A stretch of 32,715 nt of DNA, taken from Perkinsus chesapeaki ATCC PRA-425 (taxonomy: Eukaryota; Protista; Perkinsozoa). A program made the position numbers and the translations under genes. The notes below the pieces were generated by a model, which saw only the letters and a list, made by a program, of their open reading frames with translations, was not told the origin of the DNA and did not search any database. Location: NCBI GenBank assembly GCA_013115145.1, contig JAAPAO010000400.1:1-32715 (forward strand), given 5' to 3'. Shown piece after piece: positions 115 through 21,006 of this stretch (positions within the stretch are counted from its first letter, which is position 1; each line of letters opens with the position of its first letter).

Positions 115-649
115 GCCTGTTAGTGTGTTTTTTGAGGACGTTCAAGCCCAAAGACAAGCCGAACGCAAACTGCAGTCAAACGTGCCAGGTAAGCAACATT
201 GCATTATATTACAATGCATTATTGTGGCTAGGTCGGGGTAGAGGGACACCGTTGTGGATGATAAAGCAAAAGCAAGAGGAGGATAGGCAGCGAAGAGACT
301 CTATGGAGGCAGGGCGACAAATGAAGGAGATAGAACAGAAGATACTGGTAAGAAGATGGCAGAGACAAGAATCCGGTTATATTAGATAGAGGCCTTTCAA
401 GTGCTCGAATATAGTCTGCGGAATAATTTAGGGATAAATTTGGGATATATTTTTACGTGTCTAATTTACATTAAAACATGTAACGATTCTGCGAGGAAAA
501 TGTATGATAGGTATATTGGAGCATTAATTATTACTATTAAGCATACGTGGATTAGTACCACATTTATCACCAGCATTAGATTATCTGCTAATGGCGATAA
601 TCTAACTAAATGTAGGAAGAAATGTAATCACTCTTATAAAGGGATCTAA
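115..649 (+). CDS. Multi-exon hypothetical protein fragment, 5' end outside window; may be upstream exons of the PP2C gene
   Basis: Exons 115-188 (PVSVFFEDVQAQRQAERKLQSNVP) and ~232-348 (GRGRGTPLWMIKQKQEEDRQRRDSMEAGRQMKEIEQKIL) join in phase across a GT-AG intron. The 3' end is unresolved. Confidence 0.4.
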
Positions 650-1284
650 ATAAATTAGATCATCTAACATTAGATGCTCTGCAATTGGCGTGTTTATAAA
701 TATTAACGAATAGTGGTTATTATCACCCACATTGGTGTGTTCGACACCTCGACGGCAGAGAACCGTGGACGTTCTGCGCGGGCCTCGGGGCCATGAAGTT
801 CGGGTTAAAAATGGCATGAATTCTGCGTGGTCAGGGCGGAAGTGAGAAAAGTGGTGTACGGAAGGATGGGGTGCAAGAAGGGACAGGTGGGAATATTGAG
901 GCGCAGCGGGAACAGCAGAGCCGATGGTTATTGGAACAAGAAGGGTGAGCAGGGTTGTTCTGAAATTTCCGGGAAAATCAGTAGGTCGGAGTGTTCGGAT
1001 ATCTATTAGGCAGGACATGTTTTACCAAGTAGGCTATTGTGAGTATGTTGGCACACAATCCGCTATCCCTTTTTATAAAAGCGGCTAAGTGCAAAGTTTC
1101 ACTATTGCTCGTATAAAACAGGTATCTTTGTTTACAGGTGTCAAGCTCCTGTAATAGCACCTACTCGAAGCCGGAAATTGCAAAAAAATGACGGGAGGTC
1201 CTCAAAATATCTCTTTGTTCTCTCTATCGTTTTATGTTAAGTGCCAGTGGCACTTAATAAGTGGTATATGATAACCTATCTCAG

Positions 1285-4200
1285 GTGGGTGCCACATGAA
1301 TCCGATCCGAGTGGTGATTGGTATTATCATGCAGTAACGGGGACAATGTTGCAGCGCGGCACACAAAAACTATATCTGTAAGTTGATGAGTAGAATCTGT
1401 TGTGACAAACAGGGTGATTCGGTGTTCAATTCTCTCTTGCATTTTATGTACAGTTCGGTTAACAATAGTGGCGCGAAATGTTGTAATTTTGCCCCCGCTT
1501 CTCAGTGGGGCTCGGTGTGTTCAAGGCCAGGGAGCTTGATGCCGTTACCAACACGGGGTCAGCATATAACTTATATTTGTTCATTTGTTTATATTCATTC
1601 GCTCTGAATATGCAATAATTATTTTATATACGTTTATTAGGCCACAACCGGGCGGCAGTTTTGAAGAGTTGTCTCGGGAAGAATGGTTAAGTATCGCCAT
1701 GGCACGGCATGACCCAGTGCAGGCATTGAGGCTGGCTGCAGACGCTACTATGATGCAGGGGAGTAAGGTGTGATGCGAAGGAAATGTGGTATAATTATTT
1801 TCAGGGCGCGCGAAGATGGAGGACAAGCACGCGTTGTTGAAGGATCTGAAGGATATTGGGAAGAAGCTCGGATATAATCTTGACCATTTGCCGAGTCCGA
1901 CAGGAATGTGAGCTGAGGGAAAACAGAGGAATTATTTAGAAATCTATGGAGGCTTGCGGGTCACAGAAATGCGGAAGAGGAGGGTGGATAATAGCGATTT
2001 CATATTCAATCGAGGGACTCACATGTGAGCGAAACACTAATCATGTGCAAAAGTGTGTTCCACGACGGAACGAGTGAGCTCGACTCGGAATCCGAGTCTC
2101 GGATAGATTATTATTATCATCATCATCATCGCCAGTATTGTTTGTATGGCAGACCCTCGAAGAAGAACACATTTGAGTGAATTTGGATGATAGCACTCCT
2201 GTCTTTTCCATCATAAGAGACAATCACTTCCATTTCTCTTTGAAATTCCTTGACCGCTGACGGAAGCCTGGCGCAGCGTTAAAGTCTCCTGTTTTCGCTG
2301 CGGGCTCTTCCTCCTCCTCCTCTGCCGTGGGTAGTGATGAGGTAAATGATTCAATTTGTAAGGTATATGGTCTACGATGGTCATCAGGGTGTGACATGTG
2401 CAGAATACTGCATTAAGCAGACACATAATAAAGTAAGAGAAATGACATATGCGGGGATCGAACCAACGCCTCGGAAATTTAGATACTTCCGAGGTTAGCA
2501 AAGCATAAGGAGCCGATAACTGAGGAGGTTAGCGTGCTTCGCTCCGCTAGTAGAATGATGCATGAATTGCATTTCTGGGTCAGTTCATGCGTAAGCTTTT
2601 CGAAGATGCCTTCAAAGAGTTAGACGAGGAGTTCCTGGCGAAGTATCGAACCATTCCTGACGGCAGCACTGCAGGTGGTCGATCTCTCGCCGACATTCCC
2701 ATACTGGGGTTATTCTCCTCAGTTATTGCGTTGGTGATCGGTATCGATCTCTACGTTGCCAATATTGGTGACTCTGCATGTTTCTTGGTACGACGCGTAC
2801 CTGTGAAAGGTAAGACTTTTTACGGCCATTTATAATGGTGTGGTTTATCTGCTATTAACGGATCTCCGACTGTCTTTCTGGCTCCCCGGATGCATCTCGC
2901 CAAGCTGCTTTGTTGTTTTGGAAAAAAGCTTTTTCCTGCAAGTACTTTCCGATGAGTAATTATTATGGATAATTATGTGTCAAATGTGTCGTCTCCGAAT
3001 GATAATTACTCATTCGGAGACGAACTATAATTTTTCTTATATATATATTGATACTATACAGTAATGTTTCCGGGAGTTCTGCGGGCGTATTAGTGGAAAT
3101 AGCGGCGGGAATGGTCCTTGTGAAGAGGACCAGGCTCCTCGTGTCTTCCAGAACCTGGAATTGAGGCAGCCGAGCATCATATCCGTATCGAGCAGTCTGC
3201 TGCTGGTTTGGTGTTGTTTGGTGCTCACTATTTTTTCAGCGTCGACGTCTACAAACGATGACCATCATCACCAACAGCCTGGCTACACTTTAGATGTTGA
3301 GTTGTGTCATACCAACCATAAGCCTGAAGATACAGCAGGTGAGATCTTGCCCGCTTCGCTCCGCCTAAGATTTGTGTTTTTTAATAGAGAAGGAACGTAT
3401 CATTAAGAATGGTGGAGCATTGGTCACGCCTGGAGGGGGAGTGGTAGGGGTTACCAATCTGACCTATTTTGTATCTTTCTGCGTCGTCAGGCTCGCGTGG
3501 CTGCTGCCGATTACGAAGATAAGATGAAAGCCTACAAAAAGGCGACAAACGCAGGACTCGGCGCGATGGAAAAACCACCAGTAGATCTTACAATCGTCAC
3601 GCGCCACAAATTTGCGACTTTCAGATTGCCCTGGCAGTATCTCGAGCTTTCGGCGACCGAGAGTTCAAAACCCCTAATAAGTTGCTCATATCAGAGCCGA
3701 GCGTGAATCACCATACGTTAAGTCCCGAGACGGACATCGCCTTGGTAGGGTAGATGGGTTGGTGGCCTGGACAGCTTCACTGCAGGTTCTTGTCTGTGAT
3801 GGTGTTACAGATGTTATGACACCGGCGATGATTGGTGCAAAGATTCTTCAGTATAATAGGAAACCGAAGGCAGCTTCGGGAGGGCTTATACAGGAAGCGT
3901 AAGGGAGCATGGAATCATATATAGAAGATGCGATACGGGAATAGCGGAACAGTGATGTAGTTCGAGCTGCTCGTTACTACTCGAGCTGATGCACCCTGCT
4001 TGCCGCCGCTTGCATAGACGTAGAATTATAGCTAAGGGATTGACAGACCGAAGGGTTCTGTTAAACACGATAAAATGCTCTCGAGGAAACTGCCACGGCT
4101 ATAGTGAGGAGCACGCTGTGTTGAACGAGTTGAATACTTTCTTTGTGCTGCTTAACGTCCGTCGACACGCTTGAGCCAAAAGCTTCTGCTGCTTGGGTTG

Positions 4201-5082
4201 GTGGCTTCGCTTCTGACTGTTGCACTAAGTGAGGTGAACTAGGTGAGTGAGAAGTTGTGGTGTTCTCAGTTATCAACGAGGATCACAAGATAACCTAACA
4301 GCAATAACAGTATTTCTGAATTGGCCTCGACCACCAACTTTTGGAGATCTAGACCTCCTGGCCGAGCAACAGGCAAAGGCGTTGGAAGACCCGAGTTCGC
4401 CGAAGGCGGCAAAACGTCAGCGTAGGTAAGGTATTGACGGTTCAGTGGTTGATTGTTGGTGTTGGTAGGAACTGGACCGGCAAGGGAGGTTAGGAAGATA
4501 CGGTGCAAGCATATATTAATGAAGCATAAAGATGTTAGAAATCCACGGGATAGAGTGAGGAATAAACAAGTTACTCGAAGTAAGGCAAATAGAAGGATTC
4601 TTCATAGTGCGCGAATAAAGATATTCTTTATAGTGCGGGAATGAAGATATTCTTTATAGTGCGCTAATAAAGATTCTTCATAGTGCGCAATCCATGAAGA
4701 AGTTGTTGACTGTCTTGTTTGTTTCATCAGCTAAGACTGAGGCGGAGAACACGATGATGTCGATCCTGGCTGAGCTTCGGAAAGATTCTGCCAAATTCCC
4801 AGAGCTATGTAAAAAGTATTCAGAATGTAAGTCGGCGGGCATCAGGAGGAGTTTATGGGACTGGTCGTGGGCAGGTCTGTCGAGCAGAAAAGCTGGTCAT
4901 CTCTGCGGTGATCTTGATTGGTTTGGTCATGGCAAAATGATGCCAGAATTTGAGGAGGCTGCTTTTGCGCTAGATGTTGGGGAGATGAGTGATCTTGTAA
5001 GTGTTAATCTGTATTATTATCATTGATGCTATTTCAGGTGTATTCTCCTTCGGGTATTCATATAATAGTTAGGATTGCGTGA
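1285..5082 (+). CDS. Protein phosphatase 2C (PPM family) fused to a C-terminal Pin1-type parvulin PPIase, with an N-terminal WW-like exon; about 18 exons, true start upstream and unresolved
   Basis: PP2C motifs in order across phase-compatible exons: MMQGSK|[58 protein letters not shown]. Parvulin motifs: [56 protein letters not shown] (TGA 5080-5082). The two parts join through a 47-nt intron, 4422-4468. Confidence 0.85.
4594..4689. repeat. Intronic minisatellite, 4 degenerate units of 24-26 bp
   Basis: Consensus aagat(at)tctt(c/t)atagtgcg(c/g)-aat repeated four times inside the intron 4580-4730 of the parvulin part. Confidence 0.9.
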
Positions 5083-5196
5083 AGGACGATACATCCTCAT
5101 CGTACGATAGTTTCTTGTATTATCTAGTTATTGTGTTGGGGGCAATGTCCCCTGGTTGGTAGAGGAAACTTAAGTTAGGAAATAGCTGACGGCCTA

Positions 5197-5273
5197 AGAT
5201 ACAAGATGGAAGAGACATACGGAAGACAAGAGACATACAAGAGACAGACATACAAGATACGGAAGAGATATAC
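5197..5273. repeat. Low-complexity purine-rich repeat (agacatac / aagatac / ggaaga units)
   Basis: Several interleaved copies of gagacatac, caagatac and ggaagag downstream of the PP2C-parvulin stop. Confidence 0.7.
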
Positions 5274-5319
5274 CAAAACGATGTATTTAAAACGACTTGG
5301 GATAATTATAAAATCAGCG

Positions 5320-5956
5320 AGTAGCATCCAAGACTGCCCTAATCGATGAGGCATACTACAAGCGTCGCCAGTTCATCTGGTGGGCCCCAGTGAGTGATGG
5401 TTCAGCAACCTGTTCTGTGTTTGTGTGGAGAGAACTTCAAAATAGGCAGATTCAACTCGAACCCGAACCCACAACATGTTTGTGGATAAATATATCATAT
5501 ATTCATCCACAAACATGTGCATATATTATATATGCACTTCAAGTTGGGTTGTTGGAGGATCCAACTTGGATCGGTATGAGAAATAAAGCAAATAGGGTCA
5601 TGAAATAGGAGTACTGAGATGCACACGGAAGATCATTCACGATTTCCATCATTTTACAGACTCCGTAAAATTGTCTGCCATGGTGTGTCTGTATACTAAG
5701 GCTTCCTTGAAGGAAGACCAGCTAGAGCGAGGAGCACTCTATGAGGTATGAAAATTATAAGTATTGGTTGAGGCCAACTTCTCAATGAGAAGCTATTATC
5801 GACAAACTAGAAGCAGTGGTTATCAGTGATAAACTCATCACTAACTTGTTTGACCTCTTAAACAGAACGACTGTTGAAGAGGTCCTTACTGCGGTACGGG
5901 TAGAAAAGAATCTTTCCGGAAGATACACTGTGAAACTAAACTTATGCTTTGAGTAA
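5320..5956 (+). CDS. Putative multi-exon hypothetical protein or pseudogene
   Basis: Exon-like segments with GT donors (RVASKTALIDEAYYKRRQFIWWAP|gtgagt; GVLRCTRKIIHDFHH...ERGALYE|gtatga) and a terminal frame EAIIDKLEAVV...KLNLCFE*. Phases could not all be reconciled. Confidence 0.3.
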
Positions 5957-19498: not shown

Positions 19499-21006
19499 AT
19501 GTCATCTGTGCTATCTGCTGCTGCACCGCAAGTAGACCGTCATTCAGCTACCACTCCTTGGCCGCCACCACCCGCTTCAGATTCCAGGAAGTTCTCGAGC
19601 TTTCCCAACAGCGCTTGTACAACTCCCTGCCACTCTGAGCTATCTTGTAACTTGAAAGAACAAGATAAGCTTCGCCTCAACCTCTTGCCTGTGAGCACGG
19701 GCCCTCATGGCCCTATGGTGTCCATGTCGGCTCCGGCATCACCGAGGTGCAAGCTGTCTGGGTTGGGGAAGTCGTTCGGCGTAAGAGTGACACTGAGGGA
19801 CACATTCCTCCAATTTGAACCGGAAAGTGTCCCGTCAGAAAGTGGCTCCAAGTAAGCAGGTGTAGGTTATTAATATTTATTTATATTTTCAGGCATCACG
19901 GTCTTTTAAGAAGGCGAAACTCTGAACCTGATGTCGCTGGTTTACACACCCCTGCCAAGTATAATAAGCATCGATCTATGACTGTTACTCTTGCTCAAGT
20001 CGAGTCCTTTCGAGAAAGATCGAAACAATTGCCGTCGTTCTCCCAATTAGACACGGTATTCGATTGTGACATCATTGATTGTGACCTGCTCCCATCTCAA
20101 GAGAATAAAGAAGGCCTGCCTGCTGATGATGATGAGGCGTTGCCCTCTGGTATGGTAGACTTAGCCAGTATCGATGTTAAGGAAAATAATAGTGAGAAGA
20201 ATGGTATTAACGACGACGACGCTGATAAGACCACTGTGATGATCCGACATCTCCCGCGTCATCTTTCTCAGCAAGATATTATCCACCAAATTCTGGCGCC
20301 TAATGGCTTCCTACCTGGACAAGTTGTCGATTTCTTCTATGCCCCTATAAACTTCAAGACGTTACAGAATGCTGGCTATTGTTTTGTGAACTTCCGTGAG
20401 CCTGATACAGCTCACGAATGTTTCACGAAGCTGAACAGCTGTTCTGGTATGGCCGACACTGTGTCCTGGGCACGCGTTCAAGGCTGCGAAGCAAACAAGA
20501 ACCATTATAAGAGCTCTCCTATAATGAAAATGATAGACCTTTACAAGCCTAAATGGTTCTCTATTGATGGTAATGAGATCACCTTATCTGATGATAATAA
20601 AAATCAAGACGTGGCTACCTCTCCTGGAGGACCATCTTCATCTCATCGAAAGTCCTTTAGCTTCAGGCATGGGACAGATTTGTATTTGGGTGCGAATGGT
20701 GAGGTTAATAGATTCAACTCTGCTGCTGTTGGTTCATCATCATGTCCTTATAAGCTATTCATCGGTGGTTTGGATTCGCAGACTAACTCTGAGGATTTAC
20801 GCAAGTATTTTTCTCAATTCGGAGATGTTACCGAATGTATTGTTAAGAAGGTTGAAGGCACTGGTATCTCCCGTGGATTCGGATTTTGTAGCTTTTCATC
20901 TCATCAAGGCTACACCAACTGTTTATTATACCAATCGTGGCATCAAATCAATGGTCGTAGCATTTCTGTACAACCTTATTCACGTCGACGTGCGAAACGC
21001 TGTTGA
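19499..21006 (+). CDS. Mei2-like RNA-binding protein (Mei2-type RRM plus a canonical RRM); 3' end uncertain
   Basis: Exon 1 (MSSVLSAAAP...VTLRDTFLQF...SGSK) joins exon 2 in phase. Mei2 RRM3-type: KTTVMIRHLP...DFFYAPINFKTLQNAGYCFVNF...WARVQG. Second RRM: KLFIGGL (RNP2) and RGFGFCSF (RNP1). Confidence 0.88.

What the first reader, a model, noticed from the sequence alone, without database searches (positions are those of the whole stretch)
1285..5082. PP2C phosphatase fused to a Pin1-type prolyl isomerase, with a WW-like module upstream
Seen in sequence: the complete PP2C motif set is joined through a 47-nt GT-AG intron (4422-4468) to a complete parvulin domain (...AAKRQR|[19 protein letters not shown]...). 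There is no in-frame ATG between the PP2C stop-like codon and the parvulin domain; the first lies inside ILMKH. The parvulin keeps the Pin1-type basic loop (KHKDVRNP, compare human KHSQSRRP), the catalytic Cys (YSEC) and the His of GIHII. Exon 1285-1377 ([21 protein letters not shown]) resembles a WW domain lacking its second Trp. Established: Pin1 is WW plus parvulin and isomerises pSer/Thr-Pro bonds, and some phosphatases act only on the trans isomer. Inference: this looks like a Pin1 with a PP2C inserted between its two domains, an isomerise-then-dephosphorylate enzyme in one chain. I cannot tell whether the architecture is already catalogued in alveolates.
Basis: partly seen in the sequence, partly recalled or inferred. 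Interest (0 to 1): 0.8.

Follow-up and report, generated by a model that had tools for sequence, protein, structure and literature searches.

The report
PP2C phosphatase fused to Pin1-type isomerase
This Perkinsus chesapeaki gene encodes one protein that joins an apparently intact PP2C phosphatase to a Pin1-type prolyl isomerase. The fusion is conserved in related parasites and already sits unstudied in public databases, but the supposed WW domain upstream is not supported.

Summary
The window is a whole 32,715-bp contig of Perkinsus chesapeaki. The finding lies inside the deposited gene model FOL47_007020 (KAF4660797.1, partial, 637 aa). My 20-exon table (116-5082) reproduces that protein exactly.

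**Domains.** Pfam finds a full PP2C domain (E 1e-40) with all metal-binding motifs, and a full parvulin domain (E 4e-19). The parvulin is closest to Ess1 and Pin1.

**The junction.** No RNA covers the 4421/4469 junction, but comparison supports it strongly.
- P. olseni and P. marinus use the same donor and acceptor.
- The intron is diverged and 47, 54 and 55 nt long, yet the spliced frame is kept in all three.
- In P. olseni the intron is open in frame.
- In Amoebophrya sp. A25 a co-linear orthologue carries a PP2C-like region and the first part of the parvulin in one exon.
- The six best AlphaFold DB matches also span both domains.

**WW reading.** It is not supported: Pfam gives 12.3 bits against a cut-off of 26.9, and no WW structure matches. 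The module is predicted as a helix, five strands and a helix.

**What remains open.** The isomerise-then-dephosphorylate mechanism is inference. The architecture is catalogued, but I found no paper on it.

The parts
116..188 (+). First exon present in the window (N-terminal charged and helical region). The true 5' exons lie beyond the contig end.
   Evidence: RNA contigs X1 and X2 cover it and carry a further 143 and 38 unmatched letters upstream. The 30 letters printed encode ...QRYGPAPN, as in P. olseni and P. marinus. Exon table verified.
232..347 (+). Exon 2 of the window (GRGRGTPLWMIKQKQEE..., predicted long helix)
   Evidence: The introns 189-231 and 348-834 appear as GT..AG joints in RNA contigs. 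Helix 32-63 in the AF2 model.
835..944 (+). Exon 3 of the window (low-complexity stretch, then the helix that leads into the beta module)
   Evidence: An RNA contig covers 835-905. The join 944/1285 comes from the annotation and from conservation only.
1285..1377 (+). The 'WW-like' exon ([21 protein letters not shown]...). It encodes the first strands of a small beta module.
   Evidence: Conserved in P. olseni and P. marinus. WW HMM sub-threshold. AF2 pLDDT about 85-91, strands 8 residues apart from the second strand on.
1641..4421 (+). Twelve exons: 1641-1762, 1805-1907, 2363-2432, 2483-2527, 2584-2674, 2723-2809, 3240-3338, 3388-3443, 3491-3580, 3625-3744, 3786-3898 and 4270-4421. They encode the end of the beta module, the PP2C domain (Pfam match 1741-4294) and most of the linker.
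   Evidence: PF00481 1.2e-40. The motifs RRAKMED, DGHQG, GDS, CDG and DN align with ABI1 and are invariant in alignment A4. Coordinates.
4422..4468 (+). The 47-nt GT..AG intron that joins the PP2C linker to the parvulin. It contains the stop TAA at 4427-4429.
   Evidence: The same donor (CAGC|GT) and acceptor (AG|G.AC) occur in three species. Introns are 47, 54 and 55 nt and poorly conserved, while the flanks keep the protein with synonymous changes.
4426..4431 (+). Alternative donor GTAAGG, 4 nt downstream of the annotated donor and present only in this species
   Evidence: PWM score 9.3 against 4.84 for the 4422 donor. With the acceptor at 4468 it shifts the frame and ends the protein at ...RRNWTGKGG (model C). 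With an AG at 4492-4493 it is in frame (model B). Absent in P. olseni and P. marinus.
4469..4579 (+). Parvulin exon 1: the end of the linker, strand 1 with the catalytic His (CKH), and the Pin1-type basic loop KHKDVRNP (4522-4545)
   Evidence: Aligns with Ess1 and Pin1. Third-position changes between species begin directly at the acceptor.
4731..5082 (+). Parvulin exons 2-4 (4731-4826, 4875-4996, 5038-5082), carrying the catalytic Cys (SEC), the GDL/M/F proline pocket and SGIH. The stop TGA is at 5080-5082.
   Evidence: PF00639 3.5e-19 and PF13616 1.4e-20. PDB best matches Ess1 1.4e-25 and Pin1 about 1e-21. pLDDT 95-98.

Best explanation
**What it is.** The region is the larger part of one multi-exon Perkinsus chesapeaki gene, FOL47_007020. 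At least 20 exons lie at 116-5082 on the + strand, and the 5' end is off the contig. It encodes a protein of roughly 690-700 aa, by comparison with its full-length orthologues. I put this at about 0.9.

**Layout of the protein.**
- a charged, helical N-terminus
- a small beta module of a helix, five strands and a helix
- a PPM/PP2C phosphatase domain with every metal-binding motif intact
- a disordered, basic linker of about 35-40 residues
- a C-terminal Pin1/Ess1-type parvulin with its catalytic His, Cys, Ser and His and its proline pocket intact

**Splicing.** The two catalytic domains are joined by removal of the 47-nt intron 4422-4468.

**Mechanism (inferred, not shown; about 0.4).** The parvulin binds Ser/Thr-Pro sites, probably phosphorylated ones. 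It either speeds their cis/trans exchange or simply holds them. The tethered PP2C then removes the phosphate, or a nearby phosphate, from the same substrate. The flexible linker lets both active sites reach one substrate.

**History.** The Amoebophrya orthologue keeps the parvulin but has lost the PP2C metal motifs. This suggests that the parvulin end is the more strongly constrained part of an old fusion in the perkinsid and dinoflagellate lineage.
For: **Gene model.** The exon table reproduces the deposited protein exactly. RNA contigs confirm the two upstream introns and show that the mRNA continues 5' of the contig.

**Domains.** PP2C 1.2e-40 and Rotamase 3.5e-19 on P0155. The PP2C motifs align with ABI1. 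The parvulin aligns best with Ess1 (1.4e-25) and Pin1.

**Fusion.**
- Donor and acceptor are identical in P. chesapeaki, P. olseni and P. marinus. The introns are diverged and 47, 54 and 55 nt long, yet the frame is kept after splicing.
- Coding-type substitutions start immediately after the acceptor, and no ATG is available there.
- The P. olseni intron is open in frame.
- Full-length fused models exist in P. marinus (688 aa) and P. olseni (699 and 700 aa).
- Amoebophrya P0178 is co-linear with the Perkinsus protein. Its residues 310-673, which run from the PP2C-like region to the parvulin's SEC motif, lie in a single exon.
- The six best AlphaFold DB cluster matches align to the query up to its last residue.

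**Structure.** AF2 mean pLDDT 83.6, with both domains confident and the linker 484-518 below 50.
Against: - No RNA read or contig covers the 4421/4469 junction. Only two small runs were offered, and they covered only the 5' exons.
- A stronger-scoring donor lies 4 nt downstream in this species and could yield a PP2C-only product.
- All Perkinsus proteins cited are gene predictions.
- In the parvulin basic loop, the residue matching the second Arg of the Pin1 RR pair is Asn, so phospho-specificity is not assured.
- To my knowledge, PP2C enzymes are not generally proline-directed.
- Nothing here shows any enzymatic activity or any coupling between the two domains.
Confidence: 0.85

Rival explanations
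1. There are two separate products. The PP2C mRNA ends at or just after TAA 4427-4429. The parvulin is made from its own mRNA, created by spliced-leader trans-splicing at the AG at 4467-4468.
For: From my own knowledge, Perkinsus uses spliced-leader trans-splicing. A stop codon directly follows the annotated donor. No RNA covers the junction.
Against: The parvulin frame has no ATG before the M of ILMKH. Starting there would delete strand 1 and the catalytic His. The TGPAREV stretch upstream of that M is kept by synonymous changes in three species. The frame is preserved across introns of 47, 54 and 55 nt, and the P. olseni intron is open in frame. Amoebophrya has both parts in one exon.
Confidence: 0.04
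2. In P. chesapeaki the tandem donor GTAGGTAAGG is used both ways. Splicing at 4422 gives the fusion. Splicing at 4426 to the same acceptor shifts the frame and gives a PP2C-only protein ending ...RRNWTGKGG, or a transcript that is degraded. The parvulin would then be attached to only a fraction of the protein. This rival can coexist with the main reading.
For: The 4426 donor scores 9.3 against 4.84 for 4422, in a matrix built from the gene's other 18 donors. The resulting 43-nt intron fits the gene's short-intron class of 41-56 nt. The frameshift outcome is shown as model C.
Against: The second donor is absent in P. olseni and P. marinus, so it is not a conserved feature. GTAGG-type donors are used elsewhere in this gene, in introns 12 and 14 (gtaggg), and intron 13 has gtagat. 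There are no RNA data.
Confidence: 0.2
3. The fusion is real, but the parvulin acts mainly as a binding or targeting module for Ser/Thr-Pro motifs, or as a chaperone-like domain. It takes the role the WW domain has in Pin1 and is not a catalytic partner in an isomerise-then-dephosphorylate cycle.
For: No WW domain is detected. In Amoebophrya the PP2C motifs are lost (TGP in place of DGH, GK in place of GD) while the parvulin is kept, so the pair can persist without phosphatase chemistry.
Against: All the parvulin catalytic residues and the proline pocket are conserved in Perkinsus and Amoebophrya. That is more conservation than binding alone would need.
Confidence: 0.35
4. The upstream module is a true, degenerate WW domain, and the protein descends from a WW-parvulin Pin1 into which a PP2C was inserted.
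For: WW is one of only two weak Pfam hits for the segment and the best-scoring one for the window's own protein. The motif G-W-x(10)-W-Y-Y-H-x-x-T-G matches the first half of the WW profile. A PRPF40A chain (2l5f) appears at E 3.3 in the PDB profile search.
Against: The score is 12.3 bits against a cut-off of 26.9. The second Trp and the Pro are absent. No WW structure appears in the Foldseek or VIA searches. The model has five strands, 8 residues apart from the second strand on, flanked by helices. That is more like an OCRE-type octamer-repeat sheet: RBM5 and RBM10 OCRE give Z 3.3 and 3.0, and an OCRE cluster shares the most features in the Atlas. Those matches are also below noise.
Confidence: 0.12

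Closest known systems
Pin1 / Ess1 (WW + parvulin prolyl isomerases specific for pSer/pThr-Pro)
   Same: The C-terminal domain is closest to Ess1 (7kkf, 1.4e-25) and human Pin1 (about 1e-21). It has the long loop after strand 1 (KHKDVRNP, compared with Ess1 KHKDSRRP) and the aligned His, Cys, Ser and His residues.
   Different: No verified WW domain. A 300-residue PP2C and a disordered linker precede the parvulin. The second Arg of the RR pair is Asn. There is a 3-residue insertion after the catalytic Cys.
PPM/PP2C phosphatases (for example ABI1, PPM1A, PPM1K)
   Same: Full-length PF00481 match, with the motifs RxxMED, DGH, GDS, DG and DN conserved.
   Different: It carries a C-terminal parvulin and an N-terminal beta module. 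It has an insert ([17 protein letters not shown]...) that it shares with its closest non-fused relative P0158 (38% identity, no parvulin).
Amoebophrya sp. A25 CAD7946191.1 (P0178), plus AlphaFold DB entries such as A0A7S2VLK5 and A0A1Q9C9P7 ('ESS1')
   Same: The Amoebophrya protein shares the order N-terminal helices, GW...WWW module, PP2C-like fold, linker, then parvulin with [17 protein letters not shown]. The AlphaFold DB entries align to the query through both catalytic domains.
   Different: In Amoebophrya the PP2C metal motifs are lost, Pfam no longer detects PP2C, and hhalign gives 80% probability. I could not fetch the AlphaFold DB entries, so I could not inspect their motifs.
Trans-acting Pin1-phosphatase pairs (Pin1 with PP2A on Cdc25C and tau; Ess1 with Ssu72 on the RNA polymerase II CTD)
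   Same: The proposed logic is the same: prolyl isomerisation controls access of a conformation-specific phosphatase. This comes from my own knowledge, not from a test here.
   Different: Those are separate proteins, and their phosphatases belong to the PPP or Ssu72 type, not to PPM. Here the two activities would sit in one chain.

Membership tests
PPM/PP2C phosphatase (PF00481) | Profile match above the curated threshold over the whole domain | tested here: met
   140.2 bits against a cut-off of 20.3, covering profile positions 4-254 of 255 and residues 165-471 of P0155.
PPM/PP2C phosphatase (PF00481) | Metal-coordinating acidic residues and the phosphate-binding Arg (RxxMED, DGH, GDS, DG, DN) | tested here: met
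   Aligned with ABI1 3kdj and invariant in alignment A4. Window coordinates.
PPM/PP2C phosphatase (PF00481) | Mn2+/Mg2+-dependent Ser/Thr phosphatase activity | not testable with these tools
   Needs recombinant protein.
Pin1-type parvulin | PpiC/Rotamase profile match above threshold | tested here: met
   PF00639 70 bits (cut-off 21.7) and PF13616 74.4 bits (cut-off 22.5).
Pin1-type parvulin | Closer to Pin1/Ess1 than to the Par14, Par42, PrsA or SurA types | tested here: met
   Ess1 1.4e-25 and Pin1 about 1e-21, against Par42 1.8e-12 and PrsA 1e-11 or weaker.
Pin1-type parvulin | Catalytic His, Cys, Ser and His and the Leu/Met/Phe proline pocket | tested here: met
   CKH, SEC, SGIH and GDL..M..F all align with Ess1 and Pin1.
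Pin1-type parvulin | Phosphate-binding basic triad in the loop after strand 1 (Pin1 K63, R68, R69) | tested here: inconclusive
   The loop is full length. The Lys and the first Arg are present and the second Arg is Asn (KHKDVRNP). There is an extra Lys, as in Ess1 KHKDSRRP. The same loop occurs in Amoebophrya.
Pin1-type parvulin | N-terminal WW domain next to the PPIase domain (canonical Pin1/Ess1 architecture) | tested here: not met
   No WW detected. The PP2C and a linker precede the parvulin.
WW domain (PF00397) | Profile match above threshold, including both signature Trp residues and the C-terminal Pro | tested here: not met
   12.3 bits against a cut-off of 26.9. Only profile positions 3-19 of 31 are matched, and the second Trp and the Pro are absent. 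The exon alone has no hit at E <= 1.
WW domain (PF00397) | Three-stranded antiparallel sheet that matches solved WW domains | tested here: not met
   The AF2 model (pLDDT 86.5) has five strands between two helices. No WW structure is among the Foldseek or VIA matches.
OCRE domain (PF17780) | Octamer-repeat beta sheet with a profile or structural match to RBM5/RBM10 OCRE | tested here: inconclusive
   Strands are 8 residues apart from the second strand on. VIA gives Z 3.3 (5mfy) and 3.0 (2mxw), which is below noise. An Atlas OCRE cluster scores 0.54 with 147 shared features. There is no Pfam OCRE hit.

The most novel reading that the evidence does not exclude
The protein is a single-chain 'isomerase-coupled phosphatase'. 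The Pin1-type parvulin converts pSer/pThr-Pro sites to the isomer that the tethered PP2C accepts. It would be a natural fusion that shows PPM phosphatases can be isomer-specific and proline-directed. The fusion would be ancestral to perkinsids, Syndiniales and dinoflagellates. In Amoebophrya, and perhaps in the dinoflagellates, the PP2C has decayed into a pseudophosphatase scaffold.
Probability: 0.2. Interest if true: 0.75.

Novelty: new variant of a known kind. Interest (0 to 1): 0.5.

Why it matters
Coupling between prolyl isomerisation and isomer-specific dephosphorylation is known only for separate proteins, such as Pin1 with PP2A and Ess1 with Ssu72. A conserved natural fusion of a Pin1-type isomerase with an intact PPM phosphatase would give a compact system for testing that coupling directly. 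One polypeptide and two point mutants would be enough.

It would also extend the idea to the PP2C family. It concerns Perkinsus, an oyster and clam parasite near the base of the dinoflagellate lineage, whose signalling enzymes are hardly studied.

The value is limited in two ways. The gene models are already public. Everything about function is inference.

Tried and rejected
- **RNA evidence for the junction.** Only two small runs of the same species label were offered. Their contigs cover just 116-905, so there is no evidence either way at 4421/4469.
- **Alternative splice models.** Model B (donor 4426 with an acceptor at 4493, 68 nt, in frame) and model C (donor 4426 with the acceptor at 4468, frameshift) were built. 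I rejected them as the main form because the 4426 donor is absent in the other two species.
- **WW reading.** Tested with Pfam on the exon and on a 66-residue segment, a profile search of the PDB, an AF2 model, Foldseek against the PDB and VIA wide. None supports WW.
- **OCRE reading.** It stays a lead only.
- **Stand-alone Pin1 in Perkinsus.** The search with the parvulin domain alone found only 4 candidates and was uninformative. Whether this is the only Pin1-type parvulin of Perkinsus is unknown.
- **Rfam.** No RNA family anywhere in the window.
- **Atlas search for large clusters with both domains.** None was found, only PP2C clusters.
- **Literature.** Searches for PP2C + parvulin + fusion, Perkinsus + parvulin, Perkinsus + Pin1, PP2C + rotamase and dinoflagellate + parvulin found nothing on this architecture.
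Full report
**Identity of the window.** A search with the P. olseni orthologue returned P0155, 'hypothetical protein FOL47_007020, partial [Perkinsus chesapeaki]' (KAF4660797.1). It is 637 aa long and lies on a contig of exactly 32,715 bases, the length of the window. I built an exon table from the sequence and completed it with a 45-nt micro-exon (2483-2527) and three upstream exons. Joining the 20 exons between 116 and 5082 reproduces P0155 letter for letter. The finding is therefore the larger part of a deposited gene model.

**RNA evidence.** Only two small runs with the same species label were offered. Their contigs cover 116-188, 232-347 and 835-905, with GT..AG joints at 189-231 and 348-834. 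They also carry a further 143 and 38 letters that lie before position 116. The 30 letters printed encode ...QRYGPAPN, which precedes PVSVFF in the P. olseni and P. marinus proteins. The gene is therefore transcribed, its first two annotated introns are real, and its 5' end lies beyond the contig. Nothing was laid on 906-5400, so the PP2C/parvulin junction has no direct RNA support. None was listed, which does not mean none exists.

**Domains.**
- Pfam on P0155 gives PP2C at 1.2e-40 (residues 165-471, profile positions 4-254 of 255).
- It gives Rotamase at 3.5e-19 and Rotamase_3 at 1.4e-20 (residues 521-634).
- Against solved structures, the PP2C part aligns with ABI1 and others. The motifs RRAKMED, DGHQG, GDS, CDG and DN fall at the metal-binding and phosphate-binding positions. 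They are invariant in an alignment with more distant PP2Cs.
- The parvulin part is closest to Ess1 (7kkf, 1.4e-25) and human Pin1 (about 1e-21). It is well ahead of Par42 and the PrsA types.
- The His of CKH, the Cys of SEC, the Ser and His of SGIH and the GDL/M/F pocket all align.
- The loop after strand 1 is full length (KHKDVRNP, compared with Ess1 KHKDSRRP). The second Arg of the phosphate-binding pair is Asn.

**Is the fusion real?** In this window the annotated donor (AGC|GTAGGT at 4422) is followed 4 nt later by a better-scoring donor (TAG|GTAAGG at 4426). The scores are 4.84 and 9.3, in a matrix built from the gene's other 18 donors. With the acceptor at 4468, the second donor would shift the frame and end the protein after nine more residues, RRNWTGKGG (model C). 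Comparison with relatives settles which site is the conserved one.
- P. olseni (L001) and P. marinus (L002) have the same CAGC|GT donor and the same AG|G.AC acceptor, and neither has the second donor.
- Their introns are 54 and 55 nt, against 47 nt here, and are barely alignable.
- The flanking exons keep the protein sequence through third-position changes that begin directly at the acceptor: ACT/ACA, GGA/GGC, GCA/GCG, GAG/GAA and GTT/GTC/GTG.
- The spliced frame is preserved in all three species. In P. olseni the 54-nt intron is even open in frame, so the PP2C and parvulin frames are one continuous ORF there.
- The parvulin frame has no ATG before the Met of ILMKH. That Met lies after the catalytic His, so a stand-alone parvulin starting there would be truncated.
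- Full-length fused models exist in P. marinus (XP_002772065.1, 688 aa) and P. olseni (699 and 700 aa).

**Relatives outside Perkinsus.**
- Amoebophrya sp. A25, a syndinian, has a 737-aa protein (P0178) that is co-linear with the Perkinsus protein. The match runs from the N-terminal R..P.W.I motif through a GW...WWW module and a PP2C-like middle. It ends in a parvulin with [17 protein letters not shown]. The BLASTP co-linear alignment has E 8e-13 and the parvulin C-terminus E 4e-17.
- Its residues 310-673, which run from the PP2C-like region to the parvulin's SEC motif, are encoded by one uninterrupted exon. The fusion there needs no splice at that junction.
- Its PP2C signature is degraded (TGP in place of DGH, GK in place of GD). 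Pfam no longer detects it, and profile-profile comparison gives 80% probability.
- A Foldseek search of AlphaFold DB clusters with my full-length model returned six top matches that align to the query up to residue 637. Some are named only 'peptidylprolyl isomerase' or 'ESS1'. I could not fetch these sequences, and their organisms were not shown.
- The closest non-fused PP2C I found (P0158, 38% identity) has the same internal insert but no parvulin.

**The 'WW-like' module.**
- The exon is real and conserved in all three Perkinsus species.
- As a WW domain it fails. The score is 12.3 bits (E 0.18) against a cut-off of 26.9, on the first half of the profile only. The exon alone has no hit.
- A profile of the segment finds no significant match in the PDB.
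- AF2 predicts the segment confidently (pLDDT 86.5 alone, about 85-91 in the full model). It forms a helix, five strands that are 8 residues apart from the second strand on, and a helix.
- Neither Foldseek nor VIA returns a WW domain. The best Z is 4.9, below the noise level the tool states.
- OCRE domains of RBM5 and RBM10 appear at Z 3.3 and 3.0. An OCRE cluster shares the most language-model features.
- The sequence can be read as octamers: DPSGDWYY / HAVTGTML / QRGTQKLY / LPQPGGSF.
- I regard OCRE-like as a lead, not a result. I did not check that note.

**Structure and mechanism.** The full-length model has mean pLDDT 83.6 and pTM 0.62. It shows two confident catalytic domains separated by a low-confidence linker at 484-518.
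- **Shown:** one conserved reading frame, two domains with complete catalytic residue sets, and a flexible tether.
- **Inferred:** the parvulin recognises Ser/Thr-Pro sites, probably phosphorylated ones. It either isomerises them or holds them for the tethered PP2C.
- **Background:** Pin1-type enzymes are known, from the literature and not from a test here, to gate conformation-specific phosphatases in trans (PP2A, Ssu72).
- **Cautions:** the Asn in the basic pair is a caution. PP2C enzymes are not generally proline-directed. The Amoebophrya pseudophosphatase suggests the pair can work without phosphatase chemistry.

**Novelty.** The architecture has been in public protein databases since the P. 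marinus annotation, as 'protein phosphatase 2c, putative'. It is annotated automatically in P. olseni. I found no paper that mentions it. It is a new, uncharacterised combination of two well-known enzyme families, not a new kind of enzyme.

Noticed in passing
L003:2001-7426 (Amoebophrya sp. A25, CAD7946191.1): This is a co-linear orthologue whose PP2C-like middle has lost the metal-binding motifs (TGP in place of DGH, GK in place of GD) while the Pin1-type parvulin stays intact. It looks like a pseudophosphatase-parvulin fusion. Residues 310-673 lie in one exon.
   Followed up: partly
L002:2022-6864 (P. marinus GG680905.1): On this scaffold the P. marinus annotation splits the gene into two models: 178 aa (Pmar_PMAR028182) and 498 aa. 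All exons, including the WW-like one, are present and conserved. A second scaffold carries a full 688-aa model.
   Followed up: yes
P. olseni models P0151 and P0156: One isolate's model skips the 93-nt WW-like exon in frame (669 aa). Another model replaces the last PP2C exon and has an unrelated N-terminus of about 270 residues (848 aa). These are probably prediction artefacts, but exon skipping is possible.
   Followed up: no
window:4588-4688: A 26-nt unit repeated four times in tandem (84% matches) lies inside the 151-nt intron between parvulin exons 1 and 2.
   Followed up: no
window:1-73: A perfect 38-nt direct repeat (1.9 copies) sits at the very start of the contig, upstream of the first exon held in the window. 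It may explain why the assembly broke here.
   Followed up: no
window:1908-2362, 2810-3239, 3899-4269: Three long introns of 371-455 nt stand among a majority of 41-56 nt introns in the same gene. Rfam finds no RNA family in them.
   Followed up: partly
window:17230-17937 and 19978-21006: Two long intron-free ORFs lie on the + strand. From a reading of the translations only, one looks like a steroid 5-alpha-reductase or enoyl-reductase type membrane protein, and the other like an RRM-containing, Mei2-like protein.
   Followed up: no
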